Assembly (NCBI GenBank): GCA_044892505.1
Contig: CM097883.1
Span: 101,060,001-101,124,000, forward strand
Reading direction: 5' to 3'
Source of the DNA: Schmidtea nova
Lineage: Eukaryota
Length of the DNA: 64,000 nucleotides
Shown one piece after another: positions 34,058-64,000 of the stretch (position 1 is the stretch's first letter; every line of letters begins with the position of its first letter). The notes beneath the pieces were generated by a model that saw only the letters and a list, made by a program, of their open reading frames with translations, was not told the origin of the DNA and did not search any database. A program made the translations under genes and the position numbers.

Positions 34058-34133
34058 TTCATCACAAAGTATCATTAAATACATAATATAAAGGACGTTA
34101 ATAGGGGTATGCCTGTACTATTATGCCTAAGTG

Positions 34134-35026
34134 CAGGGCCGGATTAATCCATTTTAGTGCTAAAGGCACAAACTCACAGGGGTACATCTAGCAAAGTTTT
34201 TGAGTATATCGTCAAAGTTAATTTTGCGCAACATATCTGCCTCAATCATAAGCATAAGGAATCGAGCCTTTCTTGTTTCCTTGTTGATCTATTTGGATTT
34301 TTTGTACGTTTCAACTGAGAAAAGAACGATCAGTTGAACAGTTAGTAACCATTAATGTTAAAAATATGCGCAAAGTGATTTCTACATTTTGAAAGGCACC
34401 CTCGATGTTGTCTCTAACTATTACTTTGTATAATTCTCCATAATTGTACGTGTTGTTTTCCGATTTTGATGCAGGAAACTTGTGGCGAATATATGAATGA
34501 AACTGTGCCGATGGTGTCAGTAAAATACTGTTATTCCTGTTGCTTATCTAAAACTAAATAACTTGTTAATTTTCTGCTCGAAGCTTTCACAACAGAAATA
34601 GTGTGCTGTTTCTCTTTGGCTAGTTTTCTCTTTTGTGCACCACTTAACTGATTTTGGGGTCTGAAATTGAAAAAAGTATGTGAAAAGATGTAAATAAAAA
34701 TGAATAAATGATAAAACCATTTAAATTAAAAATAAATTTTATGATTCATTATTTATAATTATAACAAGTTTATAGTAAAGATTTTCCACTTTAACATTAC
34801 CATTTACCAGGAGTTTTTTAAATTTTTTATGCGCTTAATTTTTAAGCATTCAAGATTGTACCAAACTTGAATATGAATTTTAATTATAATGTATATCTTC
34901 GTTTTCATAGCACTTGTTTCTGGACTTAAATTTGTTCAAAAAAAAATGTCTTGAGGACTTGTGGGGCCCCAAACGCCGGGTGCCCAAGGCATGTGCCTTT
35001 TTAGCCTGATGGTTAATCCAGGCCTG
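34134..35026. mobile_element. hAT-type non-autonomous element
   Basis: TIR CAGGGCCGGATTAA / TTAATCCAGGCCTG; 8-bp TSD CCTAAGTG. Confidence 0.88.
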
Positions 35027-35394
35027 CCTAAGTGTATGTTCCATTTTATTTTAAAATGTATTTAATTACACTAATTAGTTCAATCGCCTTCTTATTCAGA
35101 AGTACTCATTGGTTTTCGAGAAAGTTATGGATTTATATTTTCCTAAATTTTGTTCTCTCATATTGTTTTAGTTACTGTTTTACAACATTTTCTTAAATTA
35201 TTATCAAAATAATCAAAAAGCAACATTGAATTCATGTTTACAAACGCAGAAAGTTATATGAACAGTTGAACTTGTTTTGTTAACAGAACAGTGCAATTAC
35301 AGTGAGTCGACGTTTTCCAGCATCCTACACAATTGGAACACAATTAAATCAATTAAAAAACATAATGAAAATATATTTGAATACAAAAAGTCAA

Positions 35395-35464
35395 GGAATA
35401 CCACAAAACCTCATCCAGGAATCAATATTAAATATTTTTGATCCTAGAGTCACAAATGATTTCC
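35395..35464 (-). promoter_or_regulatory. SECIS element (type II, GUGA core) in the 3' UTR of SPS2 copy A
   Basis: Minus strand: GGAAATCATTT-GTGAC-TCTAGGATC-AAA-AATAT-TTA-ATATT-GATTCCTGGA-TGAG-GTTTTG-TGGTATTCC. This gives a UGAC/UGAG quartet, 9-bp helix II with one bulge, unpaired AAA, a mini-stem and helix I. The core is ~32 nt after the stop. Confidence 0.82.
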
Positions 35465-35484
35465 TACATAACCGCAAACTCTAT

Positions 35485-44400: not shown

Positions 44401-45684
44401 TTTGTATGAATTTATTTTTCGACGCATTAATACAAAAATTTAACCTCACTCTACCAGCCCAAAACAATATTAAAAGAAATCAAATCAAATATAGCCAGTT
44501 AAAAAAATAATTTAAATTTTGTAATTTCTACATTATAAATTTATTTTATAAATCAATAAAATATGTCAGCTCAAATTATAATTCAATAATTTTGGTTGTT
44601 AGGTAAACGATATTTTGGCACACCCTTTATCAAATACACACTTGATAAAGGTTGTGACGAAATATTGTGTTCCTAACAACCAAAAAATATTTGATCTCTA
44701 GTCATACAATTATTAATATGAAAATTATTGAATTAAAAAAACACCAAATGTCAAACCAAAACATAATTATGAATTCAAATTATATTTTACAATATATTTT
44801 GAGAATACAATTCTCATTTTCAAGTATTTTAGGTCACCACCACAATATTTAATAAGTGTATAGATTTTTCTAAAGAAGTTAACAATGTTTCAACATTCAA
44901 AAATATCATAAAATTTAAATACAAGTATTTGCTAACAACGATAAGATGTTCTAAAACTTAAGGAGAGGGGAGATAGGCAAACATATCCAATTTGGTGGTA
45001 TTATATTTATTACGTAAGAAAAATTATGTATGGCCGCAAACAACTGCTTAGTAGGAATTATCAAATTATTTAAAGAATACCCATTCAGAAGAAAGGGTAA
45101 TGTAAAGTGGCATATGTTAACCATATATGTTTACCAAAATTAATAAAATAGACTTGGCATACAAATTTAACAGTCGGGACTAAATTTAAAGGGTTTAAAT
45201 ATTTATATTAAATAAAAGTTGTTTATTTAAAATATGTCATGTACTAGAAGGGAATAACAAACTGATTAATGTATTAATAAATCAGGAGAGAATATTTTAT
45301 TGAATGATATATTGTAACATATTCACTCACCATTGTATATGGATCATCAATTAGCGGATAAAAGAAGTCAGTGGTTTGAATTAAATGCAAATTGTGATGC
45401 CTCAATGGAATAACACAAGAATCTAGTCCAATACCTATCACAAATTAATTTTCAAAATCTTTTCCATAATACAAATTATCACCTATTAATGGTTTAATAA
45501 GAGATGATTTAGAATCACCGTCATTAGATAAACCACTTTTTGTAAGTCCCTCGAGCATACCTTTAAGATCTGCTTGAGGGACTTTACAACCTCACCCTTT
45601 TAAAGTGGTAAACTTTGTAAGCTTAAAATTAGAATCTAAGCCTTTTTCCAATGCATTACATTTACCAGAAATTTTAATTATCAT
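35485..45684 (-). CDS. SEPHS2: Selenophosphate synthetase 2 (selenoprotein), copy A; 6 exons, 376 aa, Sec at codon 31 (TGA 45594-45592)
   Basis: Exons 45684-45483, 45434-45331, 36448-36299, 36254-36142, 36090-35897, 35852-35485; GT-AG, 1131 nt in frame. Motifs [82 protein letters not shown] short upstream exon cannot be excluded (ATG follows TTTTAG). Confidence 0.94.
38346..38650. mobile_element. Foldback/MITE-like element with ~110-bp imperfect inverted repeats
   Basis: AATAGAATAACAATTTTTCAACAATTAACTT...AATAACAATAAATCGTAAACCATAT is mirrored by ATATGGTTTACGATTTATTGTTATT...AAGTTAATTGTTGAAAAATTGTTATTCTAT. Confidence 0.7.
40797..41033. mobile_element. piggyBac-type MITE
   Basis: TIR CCCCTTTACCG / CGGTAAAGGGG; flanks TTTA and TTAA. 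Confidence 0.7.
41723..42403 (-). CDS. Uncharacterised protein: coiled-coil N-half, Thr-rich linker, Lys/Arg-rich motif, acidic tail (up to 226 aa; a downstream Met start is possible)
   Basis: Long open GC-richer ORF in AT-rich DNA. Aligns without gaps over 67 aa (21 identities) to the 57715-58272 reading frame. Confidence 0.65.
   Translation of the reverse strand: MFISLPSKIWNLKSSNPTKFILMDNFDSQKMANNSLNRQAELDKAWRIIRSLEKEMLRKSEKIKEADVLISNLKKNWFSPDQMKAQILKTQRSQRANGEIQMELDATKMELKKCLKSVTASYLNQELKQLIRPITYQQWAEEKSGCSKGTNTDEPSQVRTIAVATTPKSTTNPKVKKKKKSKMGARQRRWKKQVLQQLAQPSKEIPEIDLTMNFVVSDEDIIKYFE
43033..43310 (-). repeat. Array of 30-nt hairpin units (three close copies at 43117, 43214, 43281; one degenerate at 43033)
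   Basis: Minus strand CTTCTTCCAC(C/T)G-N6-CGG(T/G)GGAAGGAG, a 12-bp stem with 6-nt loop; irregular unique spacers. Confidence 0.8.
45541..45588 (-). promoter_or_regulatory. Sec redefinition element (SRE)-like hairpin starting 3 nt after the UGA of SPS2 copy A (identical in copy B, 53118-53165)
   Basis: TGTA(A)AGTCCCTC pairs with GAGGGACTTACA (12 bp, one bulge); inner AGCA/TGCT stem. Confidence 0.65.
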
Positions 45685-46725
45685 CTAAAATAATTATTAA
45701 AATAATATTATAAAAATTAAAATTAACTTTAGATTGAAAACCACGGTAAAAAAATTTGTTAATTTCTCTCCACATTTTTTTTAAAATTTAACAATACTAT
45801 AGATTTAAACAATAAACTATATAATATTAAAAAATATAAATTATTAGATAATCGTATTTATAATTTATCGTATTATTGTTAGGTACGGTTATTTGCATGA
45901 TAAAACATTTGAGATAAACCTGTGTTTATTTTTCATTTAATAATGTTTTATTTTAATTTGTATTTCTTAATTTTATTTTGCAATTGTTAATAATTTGATT
46001 TTAAAAGGATTATCAACAATTGAATGACATAAAATAAAATTTAAATAAAATTTAATGTTAAATATTTAATAATATTCCAAAGATGAAATTAACTAAATCA
46101 GATTTCAATAAAAAACAAATTAAAAATAAATACTACTAATTACATTTGTCACACAAATAGATGAACGATCTCATATTAATTTTATATCTGGCAATTATCT
46201 ATAGTTATGTTTTTGACCCAATAAAACGAAAACAGATAGTAAAATGCCCGCAAACAATTCAAAAAGGTCAAAAATGGAACTATAATATTTAAAATAATTC
46301 AAAGGAAGTTGAAAAGGTTAAAAAATAACACCGAATGAGATAAAAATGAATAAAAATCAGATGAAAGATAAAAAATAAATGATGACAAATAATTCTTTTA
46401 AAAAAATATTTAATTCGGACAAAAACTACAAAAACTAAGTAATATTTTTTTACAGTACACGATACCGGTTATAAACAAAATGGGGAATAATTAATTAAAA
46501 ATAAACAAAGGAAAATTAGACAATTGTTTGGTTATTGGGTTGTTGGTGAAATGGTAGAAGTTACCAATCAAATATATGTTTCCAAAGCGTGCCTTTTATT
46601 GACCCACAGTATAACAATTTTCAATGACACAAACTTTATTGATTATTACAATGAATTACACGATTCAAAATATCACGATCAATTCAATACCTCTTTAGAC
46701 AAATATACGCGCTTATTATGATACT

Positions 46726-47630
46726 TCGTAAGGAATAGCTCTATTGTATAATGTCTAGAAAACAACAACTACTAACAACTGATTTGGATTTAAATATCGA
46801 TAATTGATTTCGACTGTCTCCGCGCTTTGACTTTATCTTTTACTCAATATTCTTTGGCCATATAAATTCTCGTCTGCTTAGCTTCGTTTGTCTTTGCAAC
46901 ACAAATTTTATCTCGGCAATTGATTCAATCAACAAATTTCGTTTCCTATATCATATTTCTCCTTTTCGTATTTCATTTCAATTTTTAAATTTCACCTCTG
47001 TTTAAGTTTCAATTTTCTCTTTATCAACTTCAAATTCTCTAACAAATTATGTCTCAAACAAATTATTTTAACAACTTCTAATTCAATTCTTCCTTCTCAC
47101 GATTTCTGTCACCCTTTCTGATTCTCTAATAAATCTCGTCTCCCACAATTTCTGTCTGAACCTGGTGTGCCCTTCCCTTTTATAACTCGTCAAATTTTGT
47201 GGTACTAGAGATAATTTTGTTTTTCGCATTTTGATTCATGTACATCTCGTGTTTTTTTTCATATTCCCGTTTTATCTATGACAGCTGTCTAGATTACTTC
47301 AGATTTCCCTTTTTCATTTTTAAGCCGACTTTTATCCGCACTCCTGTTACCTGACAAGCTGTTAAGATTTTATTTTCCTACTTGTTTTTGTTTTCGTTTT
47401 GAAAATTTCTTTCGCGTTTTTGTATTTACTAATTTGGAATGACTTTTGTTTTTGATTTCTTGTTGATCTCTTTTGTTTGTTCCCAACTTCTCATTTTCCA
47501 ATTTTTGGCTGTGTCTTTTCTATTTTACGGGCTTCAATAGATCACATTATTCGTTGAGTCAATTTTCCCCCCAGTTAATTTTATTATTTATATATTATTT
47601 TGAATTTTAGGCATCCTTAACACAATCAAT
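46726..47630 (-). mobile_element. Degenerate LTR-like repeat related to 12694-13405
   Basis: Colinear similarity blocks; boundaries approximate. Confidence 0.35.
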
Positions 47631-49189
47631 AAAAAGTAAGAAAGATATGAAAATAGTTTAGAGAGAAACAAATTGGTCGAGAAACACAAAGAAAGTAATA
47701 AAATGCGTGAGCGGCAATACTTATAAGTCAGAATGCTAACACCCATGTACAAAGCAACTATATATGGGGAACTTTATAAGCCAAAACTCAGCCAAAGTGA
47801 TTTTTGTTTGAAGCAAGCGATAATACAATATGAAGGGACCGTCCAAGAAGTATATTTATTTAATAAAGCCAAACACTAAATAAATAAAAGTAATAAAAAA
47901 CAGGAAAAAAATATTTAAAACAAAAATTAAACAGTAGGTAAGCAATAGATAAATTAAAAAATTAGAAAAAAATTCAAAGAATTTTATAATTAATAATTTT
48001 ATTTAAAATAGCTTAAATGTTGTAAAACTAAATTTAGTAATTTACACAATGAGATTCGACTCCTATCTTATTCAATTATCTCTTGTTTTGCTACGTTAAA
48101 TTTAATATTCTCTAATTTTTCTTTGATTCCACGTTTTACAATAATTAAACTTTTTTTTGTCTCAACAAATATTTTTATCAATTTTATTTAATATAATTCT
48201 TTTTTTCCAATTCATACAATTTTATTGTTTCGTATTGTTTCAATTTTTTGTATTATCTTCTAATTTCTTAATTTTTTGCTCGCTCTTTCTTCTCCATATT
48301 TCAGAACATCAAACCGTTTACTATATCATTTCCCCATTCATTTTATTTATTTATGGTATTATTTAATTTTATTATTTAGGTATCCTCAAATATATGAAAA
48401 AATAGATATTTGAGTATATCCATGTTATTAATCTAAGTAGAGGGAAGTCAGTGCTCTGGCACAAGCCATTTATCCATATACTGTATAAATTACGTAATAA
48501 TTTTACAGAAAACCCCACTTAAATATTTTGGAATGGTTTACAAAAAGTTATATGGTACTGAAGTATCACGTGTTAAATTTGTATATTACATATAACTTTA
48601 TATTCGTATTTTTTTAATAGTTTATTTAATAATTTTATTATGTAATCGATGACATTTTTCAAAAACTTTCAAATTCTTTCAAAAACTTTCAAATTTATTA
48701 TTTTTTCGAAATATTTTCAACAAATTAAGAAATAAATGGAGAATTTTAAGTCCATGGACAATTTAAACGTGTAAAGGGTCAACTCTCACAATTTCCAAAA
48801 TTAAAAAAATGGTCAAAATTCTATAATTTTTATACTAATTTACTGAGAATTGAATAGTGAACCAAAATGGTAAAAAACGTCAAAACTTGAAAAATATGTC
48901 TCATCCGGCCAAGCTTTACATGTAAAAGGGTTGACTCTCACAATTTCCAAAAAAATTAAAATTGATCAGAATTCAATATTTTTTATACAAAAATACTCAC
49001 AATTTAATGATGAACGATAAGAAACTTGACAAAATTCATAGAAATTAGAAAAAACATCAAAAATGCAAAAGAATTTTAAAATAAATCTTTATTTAAATAA
49101 AATCTTGGGCTTGTTCATCGGCGAATTGATCATCGGTTTCGTCATCAGTATCATCCCACACCCCCATAACCACATTAATTCTTTTATAA

Positions 49190-50150
49190 TGACAATAAGC
49201 AAAACTCTCATCTTTAGATATACTAAGTTTTTTATTGTCAAAGTTGGTCAAAACTATTTTACAACTTTTATTAGTAAAGAGCTGGTGATTCTTACTCATT
49301 ATTCTAGGCTGGTGGACAGAAACTATTGAATTATTATTATAAAAGTCCAGGTACGACTGATACTTCAGTTCAGAATCCTAGATGTTATACTCTTAGCCCT
49401 AATACTCTCTTTTTACCTAAAGGTCTGTAACATTTTGGCCTAAGAAAAAGCCACTCCTTGTACTTGAGTCCTTTATCCTCATCTTTGAATTTTCCAAAAA
49501 CGGAATCTAGTTTCTTGAGTAAAATGGATGATTTGGCTCATAATTCAAGGTATCTAAAAGCCTATCCTTAACCATAGCCGAAAAAAAGAACATCTAACTT
49601 ACAATTCTTGACTTCCAAGAAAAAAGAGTTTGTATCGCCAGCAAATATATTAATCTCACAATTGAATTCATTACGATATTGTTGTAATTCTTCATATTGG
49701 AGTTGATACATTCTAAGTTTAGATGGATCCAGTACGGTTTAACCAATGTAACTGGGTCTATCTAATTACAGAGAGTCCTTCGTCAATCAATATTTTAAGT
49801 TTTTCGAACGGTACGTTTTTATGTATCTATAATCAGTTTTGATGCTAAATTACATAGTCACAAATTAAGTCTTTTCTTTAGATTCTCTACAATCTTTCCG
49901 TAAAGACTGTTATTCAAGAGTTTGTAGTAATTCTTATCAAGAGCTGTAGAAAAGGCTGTCTGAGCTGGGTATTAGTGTCAATATAATTTTTAAAAATTAG
50001 TTTCTGTTTATATTGAACCGCCAGGTGAAATTTGGTAATTGTAACACCCAAAGAAACAAAAGGCTTGATAAGCCTCCAAGAGAGAACACAGTTCAACTTT
50101 GGATAATGTGTAATCATCAGCTTCTCAACTTTTAAACCCGGATTACACAT
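49190..50150 (-). pseudogene. Polinton/Maverick-type family B DNA polymerase relic
   Basis: YYKLLNNSLYGKIVENLKKR (motif III), AGDTNSF (degenerate DTDS), FLRPKCY, KIVLTNFDNKK...FAYCHY (C-terminus). Many stops and frameshifts. Confidence 0.75.
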
Positions 50151-50505
50151 TCTCTCTCTGCAACGGGGAAATAATTTACTTTATCGTGTATTTTTTGAAC
50201 TGATTTAAAGAAAAACTCGTCATATAAAGATGTTGGCTTAATGCCCACCCATATAAATTATTTTTATCAATGTAAAGCAGTTCAGTCATTTCAGAGGATA
50301 TTACATAGTGCTTGTTGACAAATGTCAAACTACCACGGATCCCCCTTTGAAAAAATTATAAATCTCCAAATCCTTGAGCAAATAAGCGCAGAAACCCACA
50401 GTATACCTGGAGTCCCAAAAAAACTCAAACGCTCAAGTTTATTGTGTGCTATGGACTTAGTTCTAAAATTAATTTCATCATTTATTTAATAGCTATATAC
50501 CCACA

Positions 50506-52124
50506 ATGTGCGAACAAATGAAGAATCGCTTTAATCAAATAATTTCGGATGCAATGCCAGACAAAAATACAACAAAAATTAACCAAACAAAATACAATTT
50601 CTTAATGCAACAGGTAAAAATTGCAAGGAATGGAGGTAATGTAATCAACAAACATTGGCTGCTGAAACACTATGATGCGTTAACGGTGGGTGGAAGGGAA
50701 CACCTCATTTTCCCAATAGTAAGTTCACAAATACTATATTATGTTCCAATGGAACAATTATTTGATGTTTTATACGATACCCACCAAGCTATTGGTCACG
50801 GAGGATGGGACAGAATGAGGAAACAGTTGGGAAAAAATACAAAAACATCACGTTTCACGACATTCAAGCATTTCTCAATATTTGTGAGCCATGCCTGCAG
50901 AAGCGTAAAACAGAGAAAAGGGGTGTGGTGGTGAAACCAATGGTGTTCTCGGAGTTTAATAGCCGATGTCAAGTGGACTTGATGGATTTTCAATCTCAAC
51001 CTGATAGGGAATTCAGGTTCATAATGGTCTATCAAGACCACTTGACAAAATTTGTCATTCTTAGAGCGCTGAGAACTAAAACGGCAGAAGAAGTGGCAAA
51101 TGAAATACTGCAGATATTTTTTATATTTGGAGCACCGTCAGTATTACAATCTGATAATGGACGTGAATTTTGCAACAAAATTATAGAGAACTTGAAAATG
51201 ATGTGGCCTGGATTAAAAATTGTTCACGGAAAACCTCAACACAGTCAGTCACAAGGCAGCGTCGAAAGAGCGAACCAAGACATAGATAATAGGTTAACAA
51301 CATGGATGTTATATGAAAATTGTAATAATTGGAGTAAAGGATTGGGATACGTCCAATTTATGAAAAATAAAGCATTCCACCCGGGTATCAAACGGTCTCC
51401 GTATGAAGCAATGTTCGGGCAAGCTCCTAAAGTCGGACTGTCTTCGTCAAATTTTCATCCTGACCATGTTGAAAATGTAAATACTGAAGAAGACCTTGAA
51501 GTAGTTTTGGCCACAGTGATAGTGTCAGACGAGGCAGATGCTACACATAATGAAGAACTTATTTCCGAAAAAAGAAAATGTATTATTTTTGGCCTGGAAC
51601 TAGAAATTCAGGAAGATGAAAGTGAAATATGTATTTTTTGTACACAAAAAGAGAATTCTCACAAAGCTCGACAGGATGCTAAAGTAAATCTCGAGATTCA
51701 GACAAAACGTATGAAGCAAATTTCAGATGCCAGCCATCCTGCAGCCGAAGAGGGAATGACGGTACGGGTCAAAGTACCAGATGTGGATAGAGGGAGAGGT
51801 TATGCACGGTCACTATTGGCAACCGTTCTCTCCGAGACCGATGATGGTTACTTCCAATTGGGTACGAGAAATGGTCTGCTAAAAGGACTGTATGCCAGGT
51901 CACAGTTTAGTGTCTGTCCTGAACAATTAATTTCAGGTAACAGCATACCAAACAGTGAATTACCTATTCGGTTCATTGCTAATATGCGATCGGTTGGCTC
52001 GGGGCAGGGCTTCGTAAAATGCAATTGTAAAAGTAAATGCAATACTAAAAAATGCTCATGTATTAAAAATAATACACAGTGTAATTCAAAATGTCACTCG
52101 AGCATGCCTTGTTGCAACAAATAA
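50506..52124 (+). mobile_element. Ginger-like / KRBA2-SCAND3-like DDE integrase with C-terminal Cys-rich (CXC) domain; one -1 frame break near 50830
   Basis: HQAIGHGG...CEPC zinc finger, RCQVDLMD, YQDHLTKF, LQSDNGREF, SQGSVERANQ, SPYEAMFG, and C-terminal CNCKSKCNTKKCSCIKNNTQCNSKCH. No TIRs identified. Confidence 0.85.
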
Positions 52125-53021
52125 TTATTTAATTGTATTGATGCTTGTAATTTGTACTGATGTTTATTTATGTTATTTTCATTTATATTAAATAAAATTA
52201 TTTACTGCATAAACTGACGTGTTTATAATCTCAGCCATTTTTATTACCTTTTCAACGCATACAGACTGAAGTGCACATGTCAAAGAATATTTATTTTTTT
52301 ATTATTTTAGTGTATTCTTTCATCTAGCTGCCAAGTGTTTTTAAAAGTTTTTTAATTTTTCTAAATATGTAATTATATTTAATGTGTAAGTTCAAAATAA
52401 ATTAATATATCATTCAATGTTTTATTGAGCTTGTTGTATCTCCTGCGAAATTTAAACTTTTGACTCGGGTAGTCTACAGACTAGAAATAACTGGAGCGGT
52501 TGACCGAAAGGTCCTAATTTTGAGAACACAGAAAGAGCATTTCCATCGAATATAAGAATTATTTTGATAACTAGACCGTAAAATAACTCGAATTGAATCC
52601 ATTTCCATATCTTAATCTACTTAGATGCGTATTTTAAATGAAAACAAAAAAACACGCAACTGTCAAACTGATATTCAATTATAGGTTAGAGTAGAATACA
52701 CATTCACTAAAACTTGCTAGTGAAGTTATATTTTCACCAGTAGAAATATATTTCCACTGGTGAAAATGTAATCGGATATGAATTCACTGAAACGTTAGTG
52801 AAAATATATTCTCACTGGTAATACAAATTCACTGTAACATACAAAATACTATGAAAATTTTTTATTTAAAATTAAATAAAAATTTCTTTATATTCTATAT
52901 TTGGCTTTTGTTTAAATATTTGACTCTTAATATCCTTCGATTTCACTTGGTAAAATAAGTTTTGAATTTTTATATTTGTAATTAATTTTTAAAATAATTG
53001 ATAAATTCACTTTTAATTTAG

Positions 53022-56000
53022 ATGACAAATAAAATTTCCGGTAAATGTAATGCATTGGAAAAAGGCTTAGATTCTAATTTTAAGCTTACAAAGTTTACCA
53101 CTTTAAAAGGGTGAGGTTGTAAAGTCCCTCAAGCAGATCTTAAAGGTATGCTCGAGGGACTTACAAAAAGTGGTTTATCTAATGACGGTGATTCTAAATC
53201 ATCTCTTATTAAACCATTAATAGGTGATAATTTGTATTATGGAAAAGATTTTGAAAATTAATTTGTGATAGGTATTGGACTAGATTCTTGTGTTATTCCA
53301 TTGAGGCATCACAATTTGCATTTAATTCAAACCACTGACTTTTTTTATCCGCTAATTGATGATCCATATACAATGGTGAGTGAATATATTACAATATATC
53401 ATTCAATAAAATATTCTATACTAATTTATTAATACATATAAATATATTGTTTTGAATGTGGTATTGGTAGATTTTTACTCTTATGTAATTTTTTAACCAT
53501 TAAGTGCACAAACCTTTATAATTTATTCAGACTATACTTCGCTTTTGTTTCTTTTTCAAAAATTTGTCTTTTTTCTTTAAACTATAATGACAATGTGAGC
53601 AATTACTTAAATTAATTGCGAATTTATCACAAATTTATAACATGCAACTATCACTGACTTTATCGTTAGTATTATATAAATTGTAAGATAAGATTATGTA
53701 TTAATACATCAATCATCTAATCAGCTTACTATATTCTTGAAATATCTTATCTTATATCCTATCTTGATATTTGCAATTCTTATTTCAGTGTTTAATGTTA
53801 ATGAAAAATAGATCGATATAATTTAATTGACTTATTAATTTTCTATCAGAAACCATTATATACCATTTCCCGGCCTATTTCAACATTTTATTATACAAAT
53901 TCAACATTTTTTATTCAAAGTCAACATTTTATTGTTCAAAGTCAACATTTTATTGTTCAAAGTCAACATTTTATTGTTCAAAGTCAACATTTTATTGTTC
54001 AAAGTCAACATTTTATTATTCAAATTCAACATTTTATTCGATTCGATAGACAAAAAAGAGCGCTACAACTTATAAAAGTGTTAAATCCAGGGCTCCACTT
54101 GAAGGGAATAGGGGGGGTTGAACCCCCCTTCCCCCCGCTGGTAAAAAAAACCCTATTTTTTATGAGAAAATATTCGACTTTAGCTTTAAAATTTTACAGA
54201 AATCACAAAATTTATTTATTTTAAATCAATGTAACCATAAACGGCATTTAAAAGCTCTTCTAAAGAATCTAAAATCAAATACCGGACAAAATTTTTTTTC
54301 AACCCTCCCCTAGTTTTGGTTTAGAAGTAGAGCCCTGGTTAAATCTATAGTTTTACAATAAAATACATAAATGAAGAAACAAAAAGAAATAATTTGAATT
54401 TACATATATTCAATGATGTACATGGAAGTCCTGCAGCACAGTTAGTTATGTTTCTACAAATCAATCTAAAAAAACCAGAACTATCTTCGGTTAGAAAAAA
54501 GTTGTTTCTTCCAATATTAAGTCTGACAAAATACCTGTCGCGCCTTTTCTCAATTTAGATCTAACGCCACTTTTTATTTCTGAAAATGAGTTTTCGATGG
54601 GGTTTAACATGTTAAAATACGATGAGAGGAATTTGTAGTCATAATCAAATAGAGAGGTTATTCTTTCCAAGTCAGCTTTTTTGTGAATTCTGAAATTATA
54701 TAATATTATACACATACCTCGCAAACGTTTTGTATCATAAAGAAAACAACAAAGTTCGTGCAGATATTCAACGAACATGTCGCCATTAACTGTAGAATTA
54801 GAAATGGTTTTGCAATATTGAGGACCTGTTATTGTCATGCTAGCAAGTAGTGATACAGATCTGCCTCACACTGTTGGAACGGTCACAATGGCCCGTGTTC
54901 CTATTCTGAATCTTTCATGTGTACGCCTAATATGCAAATTAAAAGATGTTTCATCGATAAAAATAGCCTTTGAAGAATCACCATTAAAGTAATTATTAAA
55001 CCATAAGGAATATTCTCTTCTTGCTGCAATGTTTTGAGGGCGATTAACTCTGTCCAACTCCCGCTGAGACAATTTTAAAGTTATTTTAAGGTCTTTAAGA
55101 CACCTGTCGATAGTAGTCATCGAAATATGGAAGTCATCCTCTTCGGTTTCTAAAACTTCCTTTTATTTCTTTCAGTGTCATTTGAGAATTGTATGTAATT
55201 AAGTTTTTGATTCTGTTGACTCGACTTTCGGTGAGTTTATTCCGCCCACTTCCACCTTTAGCCTTTTTCTCGGCAGTGCCCTCCATTTTGTAAGCCACTG
55301 AAATTGTACAAGCAGTATTATAATTGATCTCTACTACTTCTGCCGCCTCTTTAATAGTCAAAGACTAAACGAATGTGACCTTTTCTCCTATTATCATCAA
55401 CTTTGTCGTATGTAGTCATATCAGCTGCGCCATTTGTTTCAACAAAGTCATTTTTATTACTATTGCTAAAATTCATGTGGTCTAAACTTTTTTGAAATTT
55501 ATATTCTGATAATAAATTAATTACAATCTTAATTTAATTCCAATAAAAACCCAAAAAACCTTCGATGAAAAAATGTTGAAATTGTTGGGCCAGGCAAATC
55601 AACAAGCATCTAAAAAAAAATAGAATCAATAAAATCAATAACCTAAAAACAAAAACAAAATAAATTACTAGCACCAAATATTCAGCAATAAGCGGCAGAA
55701 TCTAAAAGTAATAAAAGCATAAATCAAAATAGACAATAACAATAAGAACTCACCCATGCGGAATACAAATAATCTGAAAATTTGACAAGGCGTGGGCGGA
55801 TATCAACGAGAATCTACAATAAAGCAAATATTAACAAAAGATTCACGCATGATTAAACAAACAACTTACCGAATTAAAATACACAGAGAAATCAGCGAGC
55901 ATAAAAGATTAACAAAAAATGCACACATGCTCGATTCTGATTGACTGGTCAGCAACATCGTTTAGTATAAATACTGAAGCAAAATCAGTATAAGGGTCAT

Positions 56001-59000
56001 TATTTTTACCGAGTGTAATTTACAGTTACTAACTGACAACTTGTGAGTGACTGATAATCTTACGAAAAATTTGTGAATCAGCATTGAAATCGAAATAAAG
56101 GTATATTCGATCATTGTTTCATTATTATTATTTAAACCCTCATAATGTTAAAATCAATAAGTTTTGTCCCGAAGATCTAACGATCTGACGGGATTCTCGG
56201 CCTCTCGGCACAACATATTTTCATATGAGGTGCTGATGCGACGAGACCCTAGGTTTATTAAAATTGATTGTTATCGGGAAAGAGGGTGCACATGGGATGT
56301 CGAGAGCCATATTACAGGTCGTATTCCAGCTAGGGTGGATATAACAGATAGCATCTAATAAAAATAAAAGAGAGCTGAGGATAGGGAGTTAGTATTCAGA
56401 AATCTACGGTTGTTACCACATAATGATTATGCATGGGAGCCAACATTCACTGAGTTCCGAAATGAAACCGCCCGAAGGGTTATGATCATTGTTAGTTATG
56501 TATGAGTAAGAGAATGATGACATTTACATGACGGGGACATACGTGAAACCCAAGTGAATTTTAACATAAACGAAACATTATGGTACGTATGCTGATAGTA
56601 ATGAGTGATGAGTTGGTTGAGTGATTATAAAATTGTGAAATATGATAGTGATACACTAAACTACCACGATCAAGATATTATCCAAAAATTCTAATACGGT
56701 TCGCTGAACAAATCGACAAGTAGCTGATCATTCAGTTAGTATATACCCACTCAAGTTTAGACCGAAAATAGCGTGGATCATTCAACAATAAAGCTACGTG
56801 GATTAGATTATACCATCATATCTAAACCATCATTCAGGACAAATGGAGCAAGAGCCGATCACCAAGTCGATATCAAATTCATCGCTAACTAGCGGCCCAA
56901 ATCGAAAGAAACCAAGAAAGATTCATAGAAGGACCACTCGGAGACCGCAAGCCGGCATATCAAGGATAGAGCTCCAAGGGGTAGCCGATGCTCCTACGCC
57001 AGTCGTTCAACAGGCGCGTAGGCACCTCCGTTTATGGACTCGACGATATACTACCATCGCCGCTAATGTGCCATCTTGCTCCTTCCCAATACAGCTCCGG
57101 GGGAAGGAGACCCGAAGTGGCCAGTATCACCGAATCAACTGAACCAGGACTCCTCACGATGGTTCATGCAAATGCTCAACAATGCGGGTCAACCCCGATG
57201 GATCCTATGCACTTCAACAATGACGGGCCCAGAATTCTTCCGGCTCGATTACCTGCTCATGGATAGGCCTCGGTGTAGCGACACTGGGGAAATCCAGCCA
57301 TACCTACACGCACCCGGAAGCATGATATCGGCACCACCCGGAACCTGACGAGCTCAGGTTATGGGAGGTATTCACTTACCAGGATAAGCTCTGCTGGGAT
57401 CCATGCCCGGAACTCTATTGACCGGACGGCCGGAGGCGAGAGGATCGACGCCTCGACCAAGAGATTCGACCCTTCTTCTAGGGAGGAGTAACATTGATCA
57501 CGGTCTGATGTGAATTTGGAAAGAAATTGATAATAAAAGTGTTCATTAGTTATTCTTATTGTGATTTGATTGCATGAAGGTGTCTGATTGTCGAGAATGA
57601 TGTGAGAAAAGTGATGATGTAGTAATAGGTAATAATCTAAATTTCCAAGAGGCGACGGGAAGCGCGAGTTCATAGTCAAATCATAATTCGAGTTACTAGT
57701 ATAATTTCTTAGAGATGAGCCTCAATAATATTCGCAACTACAAACAGGAAGCCAAGGAGCATAGATCCCGTATTAAAGTCTTAGAGAGTAGACTGCGACA
57801 ATTAACCGACGAACACCAACGAATAAAAACCACCTGGTTCAACCCAGAACGGGCAAAATCCACCCTGCAGGCGCGTCATAGAGCAGAACAGATGGCCGAC
57901 GAACAGATGCGAGAGACGGCTGCAGTAAAGTTAGAATTACATAACTATTTGAAAGCCTCTACCCAAGAATTCATCACTCAATAATTACGTCCGCTCATCA
58001 GGACTAGCACCTTCAACCACTGGATGGAAACAACATCGGCAACAATGAGTACCCAGACGGAAAAGGAGTCCAGTTCTGCAACGACTACCCCGGAAATGTT
58101 GACACCACCTGAGGGTTCAAAGAGAACCAAGCGCCGAAATCGTCTGGGGGCGAAAAGACGACGCGAGCGTAGGGCATACGCCGAAAGGATTGGCATTGAG
58201 GTGGATTTGCTGAGCGGATTAACGGAAAGACAGTTGTTAGAGGTGATAAATCCCTCGGTGTTGTTAAATTAATAATAAATGTATAGCAGTCGACTGAATT
58301 AATTTGATTGTCTGAGGAATGATTGTGGAAATAAATGTAAGATAGATTAAAGGACACCAACTCATTTTATGCTACAGGCAACCCAAAATTGGAGTTGCTC
58401 TAGCGTAAAGGGGAAGGAGCGCATAAGACAGGGACCGAAAGAAATCCACATAAACCTTCTATCGGTAGTGGTGGACCCGTGAATAAACAAGGGAATAGTA
58501 GCCGCAAGGTTGCTCACCTGCCTTGTCATTTCACAACGTTGGCACAATACCAACATGATGAGTAGTTAGGGATACATCATGGGTGTCAGCGGGGAGATGT
58601 TTTTATGTTGGCGAGATCACCCTAACATATAAAATCGAAAATGATCTCAGTTGCACAACCAACCAACGCACCAGCAAAATTGAATGGTAAAATGTTGAAT
58701 TTGAATAATAAAATGTTGAAATAGACCGGGAAATAGTTTTATTTAAATACAATATAAATAAAAGTTCGACCGTACGTACAGAGCGTACCGTATTTTTTCC
58801 GCTGAAACGCGTACCGTACGCGTACTTTATTTTTTTGTTAAATTAATAAATATCGTACGTTTTCTTTTAGCAGTATACCAAGGGGAAGTACTTGTAAAAT
58901 TCACTGTATTATATTTATATAGTGCAATTAATTATTTACCTTTCCAACAGAAAAATGTAAAATTATTTAATACCTTCAAAGAGCGAACTGTAAGAATGAA

Positions 59001-60693
59001 AACACTATAATATTTATCATTTTCTTTTTTGTTCAGGATTTTTGAAGTGACAACACAAGAAAAAACAAATATTAAAGGCTCATCATAAGTACGGAATAGG
59101 ATCGTACAATACGCGCACGTTATCTTTTTCCCTAACGTACGGTAGAACTCTGATATAAATACCGCATTTCTATATTATGGTTTTGAATTTTATTAAATAA
59201 ATATTTCAATATCATGTCGTCATCTAACATCAATTATTGTTTTAATTTTAATTTATCATAGATATCATCTTTGACACATAAACAAAAACTTTTTTTTTAA
59301 TTTCTGTTGCACAGTGTTCTATAGCTTCTTGAACTGATTATACTTACGATTTGCATTTAATTTTTATACCCGGAATAAATACACAGTAAATCAGAAATTT
59401 ATTGTCATAATTTTTTAAATTTAATTCTATTTTTATTTTATTCTATTACAGATGCATTGTATTTATTCCGCAAATTTATTTTTACATATTCATTTTATAT
59501 TAACATGAAATCTAATCATTTATTTTCTCTAGGAGATTTTACAAATATTTAAACCAATTCTTTAATTTCCTCACTTTTGCATAAATCCTATTCATACTTT
59601 TCGATACATAATTTAATCAAAATCTTGAAATTACATTCACAAAATAATAAAAGGCTGGAACAATAATTGTTCATGTAAATCTGTGGAAGAAAGTACTGTC
59701 GGAAGATATGACGCGAAATCAATTGATATCGAAACTAAAATAAAGACGGAGAAGAAGCAGCGAAGAAAAGATTTACAAAAAGTCCAGCTCCACTGAACTA
59801 TATCAACAAAGTTTTATTGATTTCAACACTAATGATGTTAAATGTTTTATGTACGAGTGCAGTACGAGTCTTTCCATTGTATGCAACGCAAAAATCCCAT
59901 TAATAGAAAATATTGACATACATGCGACATGTACTCAGATCGTATGGGTTTATTATTGTGAAAGGGCAGAGGAAGTTTAAATAAATAATTTACTAAATTA
60001 TTTTGAAAACCCAATAAAACTGAATTATAATAATACATCCACGTTGCACGTCATTTGACAATGAATTATAAATATCAGTGGTTGATAACACATTTAAGTT
60101 CTAATGAGAACACTACAAAATTATATAATATTGTACGTCTTGATGTTTGGACAAAAAGGTTAAAGAATCGTGTTCTGATTGAATCCGTTGTAAACGGAAT
60201 TTATATACAGTGGGAACCCCGAGAATCCGAACATGTAAAAACTGTTTTCCAGAATTATACTATAGACACATTTAATAACAGGAAACCCTTTATAAACCGT
60301 AATCGATCAGTTCGTCGATCGTCATTTCGTCGAAGTTCATTTCGCCGAATTCATTTGGTCGAAAGTTAATTTAGTCGAAGTTCATTTCGTGTAAGATCAA
60401 TTGGTCGAAACACAAACAATTCGAAAAACTCATCTCAGTTATGAAATTGTAATACCACAGGAATTTGGTTTAGTCGTACTAATGACAACAAGTAAATTGA
60501 TGTATTATTAAATTAAGTATTTGTGATTACCGAACCCAATTTCCATTCTCATTAAATAGATTTTATTTAAGATTTTAAGAAATTCGTAAATACACTGACA
60601 TCTCAGTAATGAGATTGCTTGAATTTTTCTATATCCTCGTAAAATAGAAAAATAGATTTTATTTAAAATATTATGGAGATATTATTTTTTACT

Positions 60694-60751
<58 letters not shown>

Positions 60752-61545
60752 CAATAATTCTCATAATGACTATAGATCAAAATTTTTTTTTATAAACAAT
60801 AACACAATATTTCGGCACAGCCTTTATCAAGTGTGTATTTCTATCGTTATATTTACTTAATCCTAAATAGTAGCCTTAATTATTTTTTTAATATTTTATA
60901 ATGATTTTATTGGATAAAAAAATTTATTTTATTTTAATTTTTTTGTGCGAATTGAATGTTGATGGACGGTTTGTATTTTTTTATGAAAAAAGTCTCGGAA
61001 GCTAATCTTTCATTACAAAGATTAGCTTCCGAGACTTTTTTCATAAAAAAATACAAACCGTCCATCAACATTCAATTCGCACAAAAAAATTAAAATAAAA
61101 TAAATTTTTTTATCCAATAAAATCATTATAAAATATTAAAAAAATAATTAAGGCTACTATTTAGGATTAAGTAAATATAACGATAGAAATACACACTTGA
61201 TAAAGGCTGTGCCGAAATATTGTGTTATTGTTTATAAAAAAAAATTTTGATCTATAGTCATTATGAGAATTATTGATAATAATAATAAAAAAAGATCAAA
61301 GGTNNNNNNNNNNNNNNNNNNNNNNNNNNNNNNNNNNNNNNNNNNNNNNNNNNNNNNNNNNNNNNNNNNNNNNNNNNNNNNNNNNNNNNNNNNNNNNNNN
61401 NNNNNNNNNNNNNNNNNNNNNNNNNNNNNNNNNNNNNNNNNNNNNNNNNNNNNNNNNNNNNNNNNNNTCGGTATAAGTGTTATAATTATTATTATTAAAT
61501 AGCGTAATATAAGATAATTATAATAATAATATATTATTTTTTACT

Positions 61546-61600
<55 letters not shown>

Positions 61601-64000
61601 GGTGTCACTGCAAGGCAGTAGACCGTGCCCATTGGGCGTATATAAAATAAATAAATAATATACAGGTTCGAGATCGAATCTAAATTAAAGGGGGAGGTGT
61701 GTTAGGGTTTTAATAAAATTAGTCAAATACAAAAATAAAAACTATAAATACTTTGTAAAATTCAATAAAAATATAAAATTTTGAAAATTAATTAAAACTT
61801 TAGAAAATTTGAAAATAAAGATTTAGCGGGGAAAATTGGTATGGGTGTATGCCGAAAATTGAGACGAATCCAAAAATGATAAAATTAAATTAAGGGGGGG
61901 GGTCCGCAGAAGAAATGAATTAATAAATTAATTAAGATATTAATTGGCTAATGGGAAACCCGAGCCAATAGAGAACCCGAATAGTGTGGGAAGCCCGGAT
62001 GAGCAGTAAGACAGATAATTATCCCCGAGAAAATTGGTGGTTAAGTAAACCCGACAAACACAATTGACGCAGGGATAGTTGGTAGTTTTAGTTAATTAGG
62101 AATTGTCTTCACAGCGTACCAGAAAGGGCCATCTTTCTTATCCCTACGTTAACTTGAAAAGCAGTTACAATAGTTCCAAAATAATTTTTTTTACAGAGAC
62201 TTGGTGTTGTCAGAAAGTGTTTCAAACATTTGTGTTCATTCTAGTTTCGAATTAATTATACTGTGTTGGGTTATTTTCTTGAATCAACCTTAAGAACACC
62301 AAGGAGTCAGACAAACAGTACCGACTTATAGAATAATAACCCAACAAGACTATCAAAATCGTGTACCAATTGATAATGGAATTAAAATATATAATAGCTC
62401 CTAAAGCTATCAAAGCAGATAAGGAGAAAATAATTCACAGACCTCAAGAAAGCTACAGCATCTATATCTATAAGGTACTGCGAGAAGTCCATATCCATAT
62501 GGGAATTTCTTGGAAAGCTCAATCAATCATGGACAGTTTCGTTAATGATGTTTTTGAACGAATATCAACTGAAGCTAGAAAGTTGGCAATTTACAACAAA
62601 AGGTCAACTATGGCTAGCAAAGAGATTAAAAATGATGTTAGATTGGTGTTGTATGTGAACAATATCAATAAAATATTTTACGAAATTAAAATATATTGCA
62701 TATATTATTTCATTAAAAACTAATAAAATTAACTGGTTTTTACTTTAATAAACCAGCTTGCAAATCATAATTATAAGTGTTTAATTTCCAAAATTCACTT
62801 TACTTTCATATTCTATCTCATTCTCTACAGAAGCAGATGAAGTTTCTTGGAGACCCTGGCGGTATTATTGAAAATGACCCATATTATTAGACTAATTTCA
62901 TTTACCAACTTTACCAACATACGTAGTGTGTTTTAAATGCAAGTAACACATTTTGATATTTAATAAAAAAATATTATTAATGTACATATCTAATTAATTA
63001 TCACAAGTTATTTATTTTTTCTTGAATATCCATTTTCTGTTCATTTGTATAAAAATATGTTCAAATGTTTTTTCGAAATTTATCAATAATTCAAAAGATT
63101 TGGTATAGAAAAGTCTGAATTGTTTTAAAAAATATGTTCACCCTGTGAAATGTTTTATTCAAATTTTCAACTTAAAAAATTAATTAATTATGATACTAAG
63201 ACAACGACATCGTTCGTTTATATTTTCCAATGTGTCTACATAGACATTTACAAATAAAAACCCTGACAGTCAATATGAACTAACAAAATTAATTTATTTG
63301 CACGTTTTGAAGTGCAAATAACTTATATCTTCATCAGTGTGAAATACTTATTTCTTGTTGTCACTGATAACTGACCCAATCAGCTATAGCACAATCTTAT
63401 GCAATTTTCCAATATTTGTATTTATTATCCTCATAATATATCACGTTATTTGAAAATGGTAGTGTGCAAATAAGATAACCTTTTAAATAATTTTACCATT
63501 TCGATTAATTAGTATAATTGTGATGAATTAATGTATTTATCGTGCAGATCTCTAAGCCTTATTACAAGGTGCTGCACTGTTCCTATAATCCGAGATAAGT
63601 ACTGATTCGTTGATTATTCTAAATTTGGCAATCATTGGCAAACAATAAGATTTTGATTTATTAATTGCTATTTTTATGGACTGTCAAATTTTTCTCATCC
63701 TGGTTTATTAAAAAGTAAAATTATTTGTGATTGATACAATTTGGCTAGCATGTTATAACTAACGATATCGTTTTTGTTATTTTGTCCGCATCTTGCTCTA
63801 TTTGACGTTTAATTAGTTGCTCAAGTTTTCACCGATAGTCTAATTTGCATTTTCCGCATATCTTGTAATCGCCACCAAATTAGATAAAAATTTAATTTGT
63901 GTTAGCATGTTAATAACATATGGTGTAATGTTTTCAGGGACGTATTGCTTGCTGTAACGTATTGAGTGATTTGTATGCTATGGGAGTCGAATCTTGTGAC
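53022..64000 (+). CDS. SEPHS2: Selenophosphate synthetase paralogue, copy B (partial, continues beyond the window); in-frame TGA at 53112-53114
   Basis: Exons 53022-53223, 53272-53375 and 63938->64000 (TTTTCAG|GGA CGT ATT GCT... = [21 protein letters not shown]). Same exon phases as copy A. Confidence 0.85.
53880..54035. repeat. 21-bp subterminal tandem repeats of the Tc1-like element
   Basis: TCAACATTTTATTGTTCAAAG x ~7. Confidence 0.9.
54088..54337. mobile_element. hAT-type MITE nested in the Tc1-like element
   Basis: TIR CAGGGCTC(C/T)ACTT; 8-bp TSD GTTAAATC. Confidence 0.9.
55583..58676 (+). mobile_element. 3094-bp TG..CA insertion with 4-bp TSD, no LTR pair and no transposase/RT
   Basis: AAAT|TGTTGG...CCAGCA|AAAT. 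Removing it restores the Tc1 right-end 21-bp repeat run (AAAATGTTGAAAT-TGAATGGT-AAAATGTTGAATTTG...). TATA box at 55964-55977, AATAAA near 56094. Confidence 0.75.
57715..58272 (+). pseudogene. Coiled-coil/basic ORF homologous to 41723-42403, with one in-frame TAA (57982-57984)
   Basis: ORFs 57715-57984 and 58024-58272 are in one frame. WFNPER~WFSPDQ, KLEL..YLK~KMEL..CLK, LIR.T..W and LGAKRRR~MGARQRR are conserved. Confidence 0.7.
58763..59150. mobile_element. Probable MITE
   Basis: Imperfect TIR AGTTC(G/T)ACCGTACG with CGTAC-rich subterminal repeats; no TSD confirmed. Confidence 0.45.
60296..60420. repeat. Degenerate ~15-bp tandem repeat (TCATTTCGTCGAAGT)
   Basis: About 7 degenerate units; resembles DNA-transposon subterminal repeats. 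Confidence 0.6.
60739..61288. repeat. Apparently perfect palindrome, ~272-bp arms, 6-nt loop (CATTAC, 61011-61016)
   Basis: Arms read as exact reverse complements. Begins in a (TTA)n tract and ends 15 bp before a gap. Confidence 0.9.
62376..62650 (+). pseudogene. H2B: Histone H2B fragment, C-terminally truncated and diverged, inside intron 2 of SPS copy B
   Basis: [53 protein letters not shown]...VRLVL. Lacks PGELAKHAVSEGTKAV; no continuing exon found. Confidence 0.85.

What the first reader, a model, noticed from the sequence alone, without database searches (positions are those of the whole stretch)
45269..64000. Head-to-head pair of Sec-containing SPS paralogues: old duplication, recently homogenised 5' exons
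Seen: copy A (minus, ATG 45684) and copy B (plus, ATG 53022) diverge from a 7.3-kb TE-filled spacer. Exon 1, intron 1 and exon 2 differ at only 4 of 354 nt, with a 302-bp identical run (53040-53341) that includes the 48-bp intron, the TGA and the SRE. In contrast, the visible 63 nt of exon 3 differ at 13 positions, all synonymous except one Thr/Ser. Established: SPS2 duplications in insects, vertebrates, ascidians and clitellate annelids gave SPS1 genes that usually replaced Sec, with a UGA-retaining form in some insects. Inference: an independent ancient duplication where inverted-repeat gene conversion keeps, or re-imposed, UGA in both copies. Copy B may be a second selenoenzyme or a SECIS-less read-through SPS1-like gene.
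Basis: partly seen in the sequence, partly recalled or inferred. Interest (0 to 1): 0.82.

Follow-up and report, generated by a model that had tools for sequence, protein, structure and literature searches.

The report
Divergent selenophosphate synthetase gene pair
A flatworm genome carries two back-to-back genes for the selenium-activating enzyme selenophosphate synthetase whose first two exons, with the selenocysteine codon, have recently been copied from one gene onto the other, while the rest is anciently diverged; it is a clear but fairly ordinary case of gene conversion, and only one of the two genes can be seen whole.

Summary
A 429-bp inverted repeat (45266-45693 minus, 53013-53441 plus; 97.7% identical) holds exon 1, a 48-nt intron and exon 2 of a selenophosphate synthetase (SPS). 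It includes an in-frame TGA and a strong hairpin just after it. ATG to the end of exon 2 differs at 4 of 354 nt, with a 302-nt identical run. The 63 visible nt of exon 3 differ at 13 sites, saturated at synonymous sites.

Contigs from four DNA samples attach both sets of flanks to the block. The block has about twice the depth of its flanks, so the duplicate is not an assembly artefact.

Copy A is a complete six-exon, 376-codon SPS2-type gene with a probable SECIS 11 nt after its stop. Its core is unusual (GUGA), and Rfam does not score it.

Copy B is seen only as the 5' block plus 21 codons. Its 3' end and any SECIS lie beyond the window. Both genes are joined to their 3' exons across scaffold gaps that I could not test.

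Best reading: an old inverted duplication with recent, probably repeated, gene conversion of the 5' end.

The host is a flatworm. A 2013 survey already counted two SPS2 selenoprotein genes in a planarian, so the pair is not new; the conversion and layout appear undescribed.

The parts
45266..45693 (-). Inverted-repeat arm A, the 5' block of copy A: about 9 nt upstream of the ATG, exon 1, intron 1, exon 2 and 65 nt of intron 2
   Evidence: Self-BLAST, 97.7% over 429 bp against 53013-53441; base-by-base alignment. Its two flanks are recovered exactly in contigs of independent samples.
45483..45684 (-). Copy A exon 1 (ATG at 45684; in-frame TGA at 45594-45592 in the motif G-U-G-C-K)
   Evidence: Translation and GT donor; aligns with the GCGCKV region of SPS homologues.
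45526..45597 (-). SRE-like hairpin beginning at the UGA of copy A (identical to that of copy B)
   Evidence: Folded for the identical B sequence: -27.8 kcal/mol, z = -4.5, 0 of 200 shuffles as stable. The same GUCCCUC/GAGGGAC stem occurs in a distant Sec-SPS transcript, L001.
45331..45434 (-). Copy A exon 2 ([10 protein letters not shown]...[15 protein letters not shown])
   Evidence: AG acceptor, GT donor, phase-consistent. The identical B exon matches human SEPHS1 residues 68-101, E = 5e-12.
36299..36448 (-). Copy A exon 3
   Evidence: tblastn of 131 SPS proteins.
36142..36254 (-). Copy A exon 4
   Evidence: The intron position before it is shared with the relative L002.
35897..36090 (-). 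Copy A exon 5
35485..35852 (-). Copy A exon 6 with TAA stop
   Evidence: Pfam AIRS_C, E = 3e-11; human SEPHS1 3FD5, E = 1e-24.
35389..35473 (-). Probable SECIS element of copy A: core GUGA at 35453-35450, 3' UGA at 35413-35411, 11 helix-II pairs by the scanner's count (the last two use the first AA of the AAAA run) with one bulge, A-rich apical loop
   Evidence: It is the only hit of my scanner in 2.7 kb downstream of the stop and the best of 11 hits in both strands of the window; fold. The relative L002 has an AUGA SECIS at the same place with the same UGACUCU.GG arm. Against: Rfam does not score it.
37670..37817 (.). Assembly gap inside intron 2 of copy A
   Evidence: Run of N; continuity not tested.
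45694..53012 (.). Spacer between the two 5' blocks, with an integrase-bearing reading frame at 50766-52121 and high-copy sequence at 52000-52908
   Evidence: Pfam rve; frame limits; contig depth 5-15 times that of the flanks.
53013..53441 (+). Inverted-repeat arm B, the 5' block of copy B
   Evidence: Contigs of four samples join it to B's own upstream and downstream flanks (records 2, 3, 12, 20, 29, 31).
53022..53223 (+). Copy B exon 1 (ATG at 53022; TGA at 53112-53114). The protein differs from A only at residues 2-3 (TN instead of II)
53109..53180 (+). SRE-like hairpin of copy B
53272..53375 (+). Copy B exon 2
61304..61467 (.). Assembly gap inside the proposed intron 2 of copy B
   Evidence: Run of N. 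Only (ATT)n microsatellites are shared by its two sides. Continuity not tested.
63938..64000 (+). Copy B exon 3, first 21 codons, cut by the window end
   Evidence: Good acceptor (ttttcag) and in phase with exon 2. It has 13 of 63 differences from A, with one amino-acid change. It is the only other SPS-like exon in the window.

Best explanation
Two linked, divergently transcribed paralogues of a selenocysteine-type selenophosphate synthetase (SPS2-like) lie about 7.3 kb apart. They arose by an old inverted duplication.

The first roughly 350-430 bp of the two genes have been homogenised by recent, probably repeated, interlocus gene conversion between the inverted copies. This stretch runs from the acceptor-like TTTAG just before the ATG to about 65 nt into intron 2. 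Both genes therefore now carry the same in-frame UGA and the same hairpin after it.

Copy A is a complete gene and most likely makes a Sec-containing enzyme. Its UGA is recoded with the help of the hairpin (a Sec redefinition element) and a SECIS starting 11 nt after the stop codon.

Copy B is most likely a second functional SPS gene. Its exon 3 has been kept under purifying selection.

Shown: the sequence pattern, the gene model of A, and the presence of both copies in genomic DNA.

Inferred: conversion as the mechanism, splicing of B's exon 2 to exon 3 at 63938, function of the SECIS, and Sec insertion.
For: - Divergence changes abruptly. 53040-53387 has 1 difference in 348 nt, including a whole intron. 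Exon 3 has 13 in 63, with synonymous sites saturated. The rest of the two second introns is unrelated.
- The repeat is layered, at about 85%, 99.7% and 90% identity, as expected from nested conversion tracts.
- Both copies are real. In four DNA samples, contigs attach the block to A's flanks and to B's flanks. The A flanks match 45694-45723 and 45239-45268 exactly. The shared part has the summed depth of the flanks: in X4, 63.3 against 28.7, 32.3 and 26; in X1, 25.7 against 15.6 plus 11.4.
- Copy A has six GT-AG exons totalling 1131 nt, collinear with SPS proteins. It has an AIRS_C hit and matches human SEPHS1.
- The hairpin after the UGA has z = -4.5, and its stem is conserved in a distant Sec-SPS transcript.
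- There is a SECIS-like element just after A's stop, matched in position and arm sequence by the closest relative found.
- No other SPS-like exon lies upstream of 63938 on the plus strand.
Against: - Only 21 codons of B beyond the converted block are visible, so the age of the duplication and the selection on B rest on very little sequence.
- Each 5' block is joined to its 3' exons across an untested scaffold gap (37670-37817 and 61304-61467).
- No RNA data exist for this organism in the runs offered, so no splice junction is confirmed.
- Rfam's SECIS models do not score the proposed SECIS. Its core is GUGA with a 3' UGAG, whereas the published consensus is UGAN/KGAW.
- A decayed H2B-like frame lies on the same strand inside B's proposed intron.
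Confidence: 0.68

Rival explanations
1. Block B is a recent, short partial duplicate (dead exons 1-2) that merely lies upstream of an older SPS paralogue. Exon 63938 would use other 5' exons, hidden in the gap or lost, or that paralogue would be a 5'-truncated pseudogene.
For: The repeat is only 429 bp with sharp ends. The proposed intron is 10.6 kb and contains a gap, transposon remains and an H2B-like frame. No RNA evidence is available.
Against: A random insertion would not land in the right orientation, with intact ATG, TGA, splice sites and matching phase, upstream of the one exon it fits. No other SPS-like exon 1 or 2 exists in the 10.6 kb. The outer layers of the repeat are at 85-90% identity, which fits old homology overwritten by conversion better than a single recent insertion.
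Confidence: 0.12
2. Scaffolding error. The contig carrying exon 63938, or the one carrying A's exons 3-6, does not belong next to the central contig 37818-61303. In that case one of the two 5' blocks would be an orphan.
For: Both joins cross runs of N, and neither was tested.
Against: Two 5' blocks facing outward are each met by a 3' part on the correct strand and in the correct phase. That would be an unlikely coincidence for a wrong join. The arrangement is symmetric, so even flipping the central contig gives two complete genes.
Confidence: 0.08
3. Copy B is intact at its 5' end but is a SECIS-less gene. It would then be either newly inactivated by conversion or decoded by hairpin-assisted read-through, an SPS1-UGA-like state.
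For: Conversion can carry a UGA into a paralogue. Insects keep SPS1 genes with UGA and a strong hairpin but no SECIS (PMC4561486). B's 3' UTR has not been seen.
Against: Jiang et al. 2013 counted two SPS2 genes as selenoproteins in a planarian after checking the 3' UTRs for SECIS elements. This assumes the same gene pair is meant. Nothing in the window speaks for loss of a SECIS.
Confidence: 0.1
4. The second 5' block is an assembly artefact, either a collapsed or mis-placed copy or a haplotype.
For: The assembly has estimated-length gaps, and a 302-nt exact repeat is hard to assemble from short reads.
Against: All four flank junctions are found in independently built contigs of four samples. 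The shared part has twice the depth of each flank. Ten differences plus a 2-nt indel separate the arms. Exon 3 divergence is far beyond allelic.
Confidence: 0.02

Closest known systems
Metazoan SPS2 (SEPHS2) selenoenzyme genes with in-frame UGA, SRE hairpin and 3' SECIS (Mariotti et al. 2015, PMC4561486)
   Same: Both have the G-U-G-C-K active-site motif with UGA, a stable hairpin starting at the UGA, the AIRS/AIRS_C fold family, and a SECIS-like element in the 3' UTR of copy A.
   Different: The SECIS core reads GUGA/UGAG instead of the usual AUGA/KGAW and is not scored by Rfam. Here there are two linked copies.
Two SPS2 selenoprotein genes counted in Schmidtea mediterranea (Jiang et al. 2013, PMC3828610, Table 2)
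   Same: A free-living flatworm with two UGA-containing SPS2 genes. This is probably the same pair or its orthologues.
   Different: That paper gives only the count. It reports no layout, no divergence pattern and no conversion. Species identity with this window is not established.
SPS1/SPS2 pairs from independent duplications (vertebrates, insects, ascidians, clitellate annelids), including the paraneopteran insects (Rhodnius prolixus, Pediculus humanus) that keep UGA in both genes (PMC4561486)
   Same: A lineage-specific duplication of an ancestral Sec-SPS2. As in R. prolixus and P. humanus, both copies keep UGA.
   Different: In those cases the paralogues are diverged along their whole length and one copy has lost the SECIS. 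Here the 5' ends are nearly identical, and the SECIS state of copy B is unknown.
Interlocus gene conversion between inverted paralogues (for example palindrome arms of sex chromosomes, or globin and opsin gene pairs)
   Same: A short tract of near-identity that includes introns lies inside otherwise old paralogues. The copies are in inverted orientation and a few kb apart.
   Different: Nothing unusual. The only special point is that the tract carries a recoding signal (UGA plus hairpin).

Membership tests
Selenophosphate synthetase (SelD/SPS, PurM superfamily) | AIRS_C (PurM-like C-terminal) domain | tested here: met
   Copy A exon 6: PF02769, E = 3.4e-11, 44 bits against a cut-off of 23.1. 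Copy B: this part is outside the window.
Selenophosphate synthetase (SelD/SPS, PurM superfamily) | Sequence similarity along the whole length to SPS proteins, including solved structures | tested here: met
   Copy A's exon pieces align collinearly with four SPS proteins, at 51-61% identity summed over exons. They match human SEPHS1 3FD5 at E = 1e-24 and 5e-12, and Leishmania 5L16. For copy B only residues 1-102 and 21 more can be judged.
Selenophosphate synthetase (SelD/SPS, PurM superfamily) | N-terminal glycine-rich loop with Sec or Cys followed by Lys (G-U/C-G-C-K) | tested here: met
   Both copies read LKG-TGA-GCKVPQ, aligned to GCGCKV of P0022.
Eukaryotic selenoprotein gene | In-frame UGA at the position where homologues have Sec or Cys | tested here: met
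   A at 45594-45592 and B at 53112-53114. The distant homologue L001 has TGA at the same place.
Eukaryotic selenoprotein gene | SECIS element in the 3' UTR | tested here: inconclusive
   Copy A has a SECIS-like stem-loop at 35389-35473. It is the best of 11 scanner hits in 128 kb and is matched by a relative's SECIS at the same place. Rfam gives no match, but Rfam also missed the canonical SECIS of the control L001. Copy B's 3' UTR is outside the window.
Eukaryotic selenoprotein gene | Sec actually inserted (transcript, protein) | not testable with these tools
   No RNA run was offered, and no proteomics data are available.
SPS1-type paralogue (non-Sec function; Mariotti et al. 2015) | Sec replaced by another residue, or UGA kept without a SECIS | not testable with these tools
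   B keeps UGA. Presence or absence of a SECIS cannot be seen.
Interlocus gene conversion tract | Abrupt change of divergence between paralogues, with non-coding sequence included in the similar part | tested here: met
   1 difference in 348 nt against 13 in 63, Fisher p = 1e-10. Intron 1 is identical. The remainder of the second introns is unrelated.
Interlocus gene conversion tract | Both copies present in genomic DNA (not an assembly duplicate) | tested here: met
   Four samples carry both flank sets, and the shared part has double depth. All four come from one study, and one may be the assembly's own source.
Interlocus gene conversion tract | Tree incongruence between converted and unconverted parts across species; donor direction | not testable with these tools
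   No related flatworm locus could be fetched. The protein collections hold no same-species or close-relative SPS.

The most novel reading that the evidence does not exclude
Copy B is an old SPS1-like, SECIS-less paralogue onto which conversion from the Sec gene has recently re-imposed a UGA and its read-through-promoting hairpin. It would now be decoded by non-Sec read-through. This would be a fifth, flatworm-specific origin of an SPS1-type gene, caught in the UGA state. The 430-bp inverted arms would also allow flipping of the 7.3-kb spacer, and so exchange of the two genes' upstream regions.
Probability: 0.08. Interest if true: 0.75.

Novelty: new member of a known kind. Interest (0 to 1): 0.4.

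Why it matters
SPS is both a selenoprotein and the enzyme needed to make all selenoproteins. Its repeated duplications into SPS2 and SPS1 are the textbook example of parallel subfunctionalisation.

A flatworm pair in which conversion keeps the recoding signals (UGA plus hairpin) identical in both genes would show that concerted evolution can oppose or reverse the usual loss of Sec in one copy. It would also add a lineage that the main survey treats as having a single SPS.

As it stands the case is modest, for three reasons. Two planarian SPS2 genes were already counted in 2013. Gene conversion between inverted paralogues is common. The informative half of copy B has not been seen.

On the practical side, the near-identical 5' ends will mislead short-read mapping, RNAi or probe design, and gene prediction for these two genes.

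Tried and rejected
- Rfam scans gave no SECIS: the whole window at gathering score, then 33000-35600 and 35330-35500 at E up to 10. Rfam also missed a canonical SECIS in a control transcript, so the negative result was set aside.
- I tried to reach the rest of copy B through the protein collections. I ran a representative search with A's exon 6, a profile of homologues plus separate exon pieces, and exon 6 alone. The best hits were 59-62% identical and none came from this species. Cluster look-up gave no names.
- Only four runs hold the locus. All are DNA, kept as contigs, from one study. There is no RNA, so no junction test was possible.
- I looked for remains of homology between the two second introns. 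Only short low-identity repeats turned up.
- I looked for other SPS exons that could serve exon 63938. There are none.
- I asked whether the gap at 61304-61467 lies in a shared repeat. Only (ATT)n is shared.
- Further reading frames in the spacer and introns gave no Pfam hits.
- Assembly artefact and allelic explanations were rejected and on the size of the exon 3 divergence.
- No run of N was filled or looked up elsewhere.


Full report
**What is in the sequence**

The window is AT-rich (31% G+C) and has five runs of N. Self-comparison finds one strong inverted repeat: 45266-45693 against 53441-53013, 97.7% identical over 429 bp.

On the minus strand from 45684, and on the plus strand from 53022, each arm reads as follows. 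There is an ATG, 30 codons, then TGA in the motif LKG-U-GCKVPQ. A GT donor follows, then a 48-nt intron, then a second exon ([10 protein letters not shown]...[15 protein letters not shown]) ending in a GT donor.

- There are 4 differences in the 354 nt from ATG to the end of exon 2, at 53026, 53029, 53039 and 53342.
- 53040-53341 is identical.

Similarity starts about 9 nt before the ATG, at an acceptor-like TTTAG, and ends about 65 nt into intron 2. The repeat is layered:
- 53013-53039 has 4 differences in 27 nt.
- 53040-53387 has 1 in 348 nt.
- 53388-53441 has 5 substitutions and a 2-nt indel.
- Beyond that there is nothing.

**Copy A is a complete gene**

Four further exons lie at 35485-36448 on the minus strand. 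All six exons have GT-AG borders and consistent phases. Together they give 1131 nt, or 376 codons plus the stop.

The exon pieces were kept apart throughout. They align collinearly with four SPS proteins.
- Exon 6 hits Pfam AIRS_C at E = 3e-11 and human SEPHS1 (3FD5) at E = 1e-24.
- Exon 2 matches SEPHS1 residues 68-101 at E = 5e-12.

The nearest proteins in the large collections are only 51-62% identical. This lineage's SPS is therefore not represented there.

**Recoding signals**

The 86 nt around the UGA fold into a long hairpin that starts at the UGA. Its energy is -27.8 kcal/mol with z = -4.5, and none of 200 shuffles is as stable. The same GUCCCUC/GAGGGAC stem is present in a distant UGA-containing SPS transcript from a marine metatranscriptome, L001. 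This matches the Sec redefinition element described for SPS2 genes (PMC4561486).

Rfam finds no SECIS. A simple scanner of my own looks for UGA, at least 8 helix-II pairs, an AA in the loop, and GA.
- It finds exactly one hit in the 2.7 kb after A's stop codon, at 35453-35410.
- That hit is the best of 11 hits on both strands of the whole window.
- Together with a 5-, 10- and 5-bp lower helix, the element spans 35389-35473.
- The scanner finds the canonical SECIS of the control L001, which Rfam also misses.

The closest relative found is L002, 62% identical in exon 6 and with the same intron position before exon 4. It has an AUGA SECIS beginning a few nucleotides after its stop, with the same UGACUCU.GG arm.

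The core here is GUGA on the 5' side and UGAG on the 3' side. The published consensus is UGAN/KGAW (PMC3753652). I therefore call it probable, not proven.

**Copy B**

Beyond its 5' block the window shows only 63938-64000. This follows a good acceptor and is in phase with exon 2. It encodes [21 protein letters not shown].

Against A's exon 3 it differs at 13 of 63 nt with one Thr/Ser change.
- Exon 3 has synonymous pS 0.86 (saturated) and dN 0.04.
- Exons 1-2 have dS 0.03 and dN 0.009.
- Fisher's test gives p = 1e-8.

The 200 nt before the two third exons are unrelated, as is the rest of the two second introns. tblastn with 131 SPS proteins finds no other SPS-like exon anywhere in the window. 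The only assembled partner for exon 63938 is therefore block B.

**Is the duplicate real?**

All four are DNA, kept as contigs, from one study.

In every sample the block is attached both to B's flanks and to A's flanks.
- The loose ends before 53013 equal 45694-45723 exactly.
- The loose ends after 53437 equal 45239-45268 exactly.

Contig depth of the shared part equals the sum of the flank depths.
- In X4 it is 63.3, against 28.7 (B upstream), 32.3 (B downstream) and 26 (A downstream).
- In X1 it is 25.7, against 15.6 plus 11.4.

Two caveats apply. Contigs built from 31-letter words cannot phase the 302-nt identical run. One of the samples may also be the source of the assembly.

**The gaps**

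Both 5' blocks lie on one gap-free stretch, 37818-61303. Each is joined to its 3' exons across a run of N: 37670-37817 for A and 61304-61467 for B.

The gap named in the finding lies inside an intron, so no frame crosses it. Its two sides share only (ATT)n. Continuity was not tested, and I did not fill or look up any N.

The arrangement argues for the scaffold. Two outward-facing 5' blocks each meet a 3' part on the right strand and in the right phase. Because the arrangement is symmetric, it would give two complete genes even if the central piece were flipped.

**Organism and literature**

Earlier notes of this scan call the genome a flatworm, probably a planarian. My only check is that a dynein intermediate chain exon at 3035-3949 has its best named matches in trematodes, at 76-80%.

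Mariotti et al. 2015 list flatworms as a lineage with a single SPS. They also note that Rhodnius and Pediculus keep UGA in both SPS1 and SPS2.

Jiang et al. 2013 count two SPS2 selenoprotein genes in Schmidtea mediterranea and two in Schistosoma japonicum. They give no further detail.

Two UGA-containing SPS2 genes in a planarian are therefore not new. The head-to-head layout and the converted 5' end appear undescribed in the papers I could search.

**Explanation**

The best reading is an old inverted duplication followed by recent, probably repeated, gene conversion limited to the 5' 350-430 bp. This keeps the UGA and hairpin identical in both genes.

Rivals, in order of weight:
- Block B is a dead partial duplicate.
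- B is SECIS-less, and is either newly inactivated or decoded by read-through.
- A scaffold misjoin.
- An assembly artefact, which is essentially excluded.

**Left out by rule**

The joined six-exon protein, read through the TGA, was not built for any search, fold or structure prediction. The pieces were searched apart.

Noticed in passing
window 62340-62720 (+): A decayed histone H2B-like reading frame lies inside the proposed intron 2 of copy B, on the same strand. It has Pfam Histone E = 5e-15 and PDB H2B E = 5e-25 over the histone fold. It lacks the lysine-rich tail and the C-terminal helix, so it is probably a pseudogene.
   Followed up: partly
window 3035-3949 (-): A 304-codon open exon of an axonemal dynein intermediate chain 2 (DNAI2) gene. 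Its best named matches are trematode flatworms at 76-80% identity, which supports a flatworm origin of the window.
   Followed up: partly
window 50766-52121 (+) and 54491-54838 (-): Transposon remains: an integrase (rve) frame in the spacer between the two SPS genes, and a DDE_3 transposase fragment in B's intron 2. 52000-52908 has 5-15 times the contig depth of neighbouring unique sequence.
   Followed up: partly
window 52891-52978: Structural variation just upstream of copy B among the four samples. An 82-nt skip (52891 to 52974) occurs in two samples, and several different sequences adjoin 52978. This is either polymorphism or other genomic copies of an AT-rich repeat.
   Followed up: no
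L001 1458-1503; L002 about 910-990: Rfam release 15 finds no SECIS at E up to 1 in two UGA-type SPS loci from other organisms, although both have a clear AUGA...AAAA...GA SECIS. Absence of an Rfam SECIS hit is therefore weak evidence in such genes.
   Followed up: yes
window 53342 in runs X1-X4: The one difference inside the converted core (T in B, C in A) appears as C on a contig with B's upstream flank in X1, and as T on a contig with A's upstream flank in X2. This may be bubble-popping by the contig builder, or the site may be shuffled between the copies by ongoing conversion.
   Followed up: no
window 45685-45693 and 53013-53021: Similarity between the two genes begins at an acceptor-like TTTAG immediately before each ATG. 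In a flatworm this could be a spliced-leader trans-splice site, which would leave mRNAs with almost no 5' UTR of their own.
   Followed up: no
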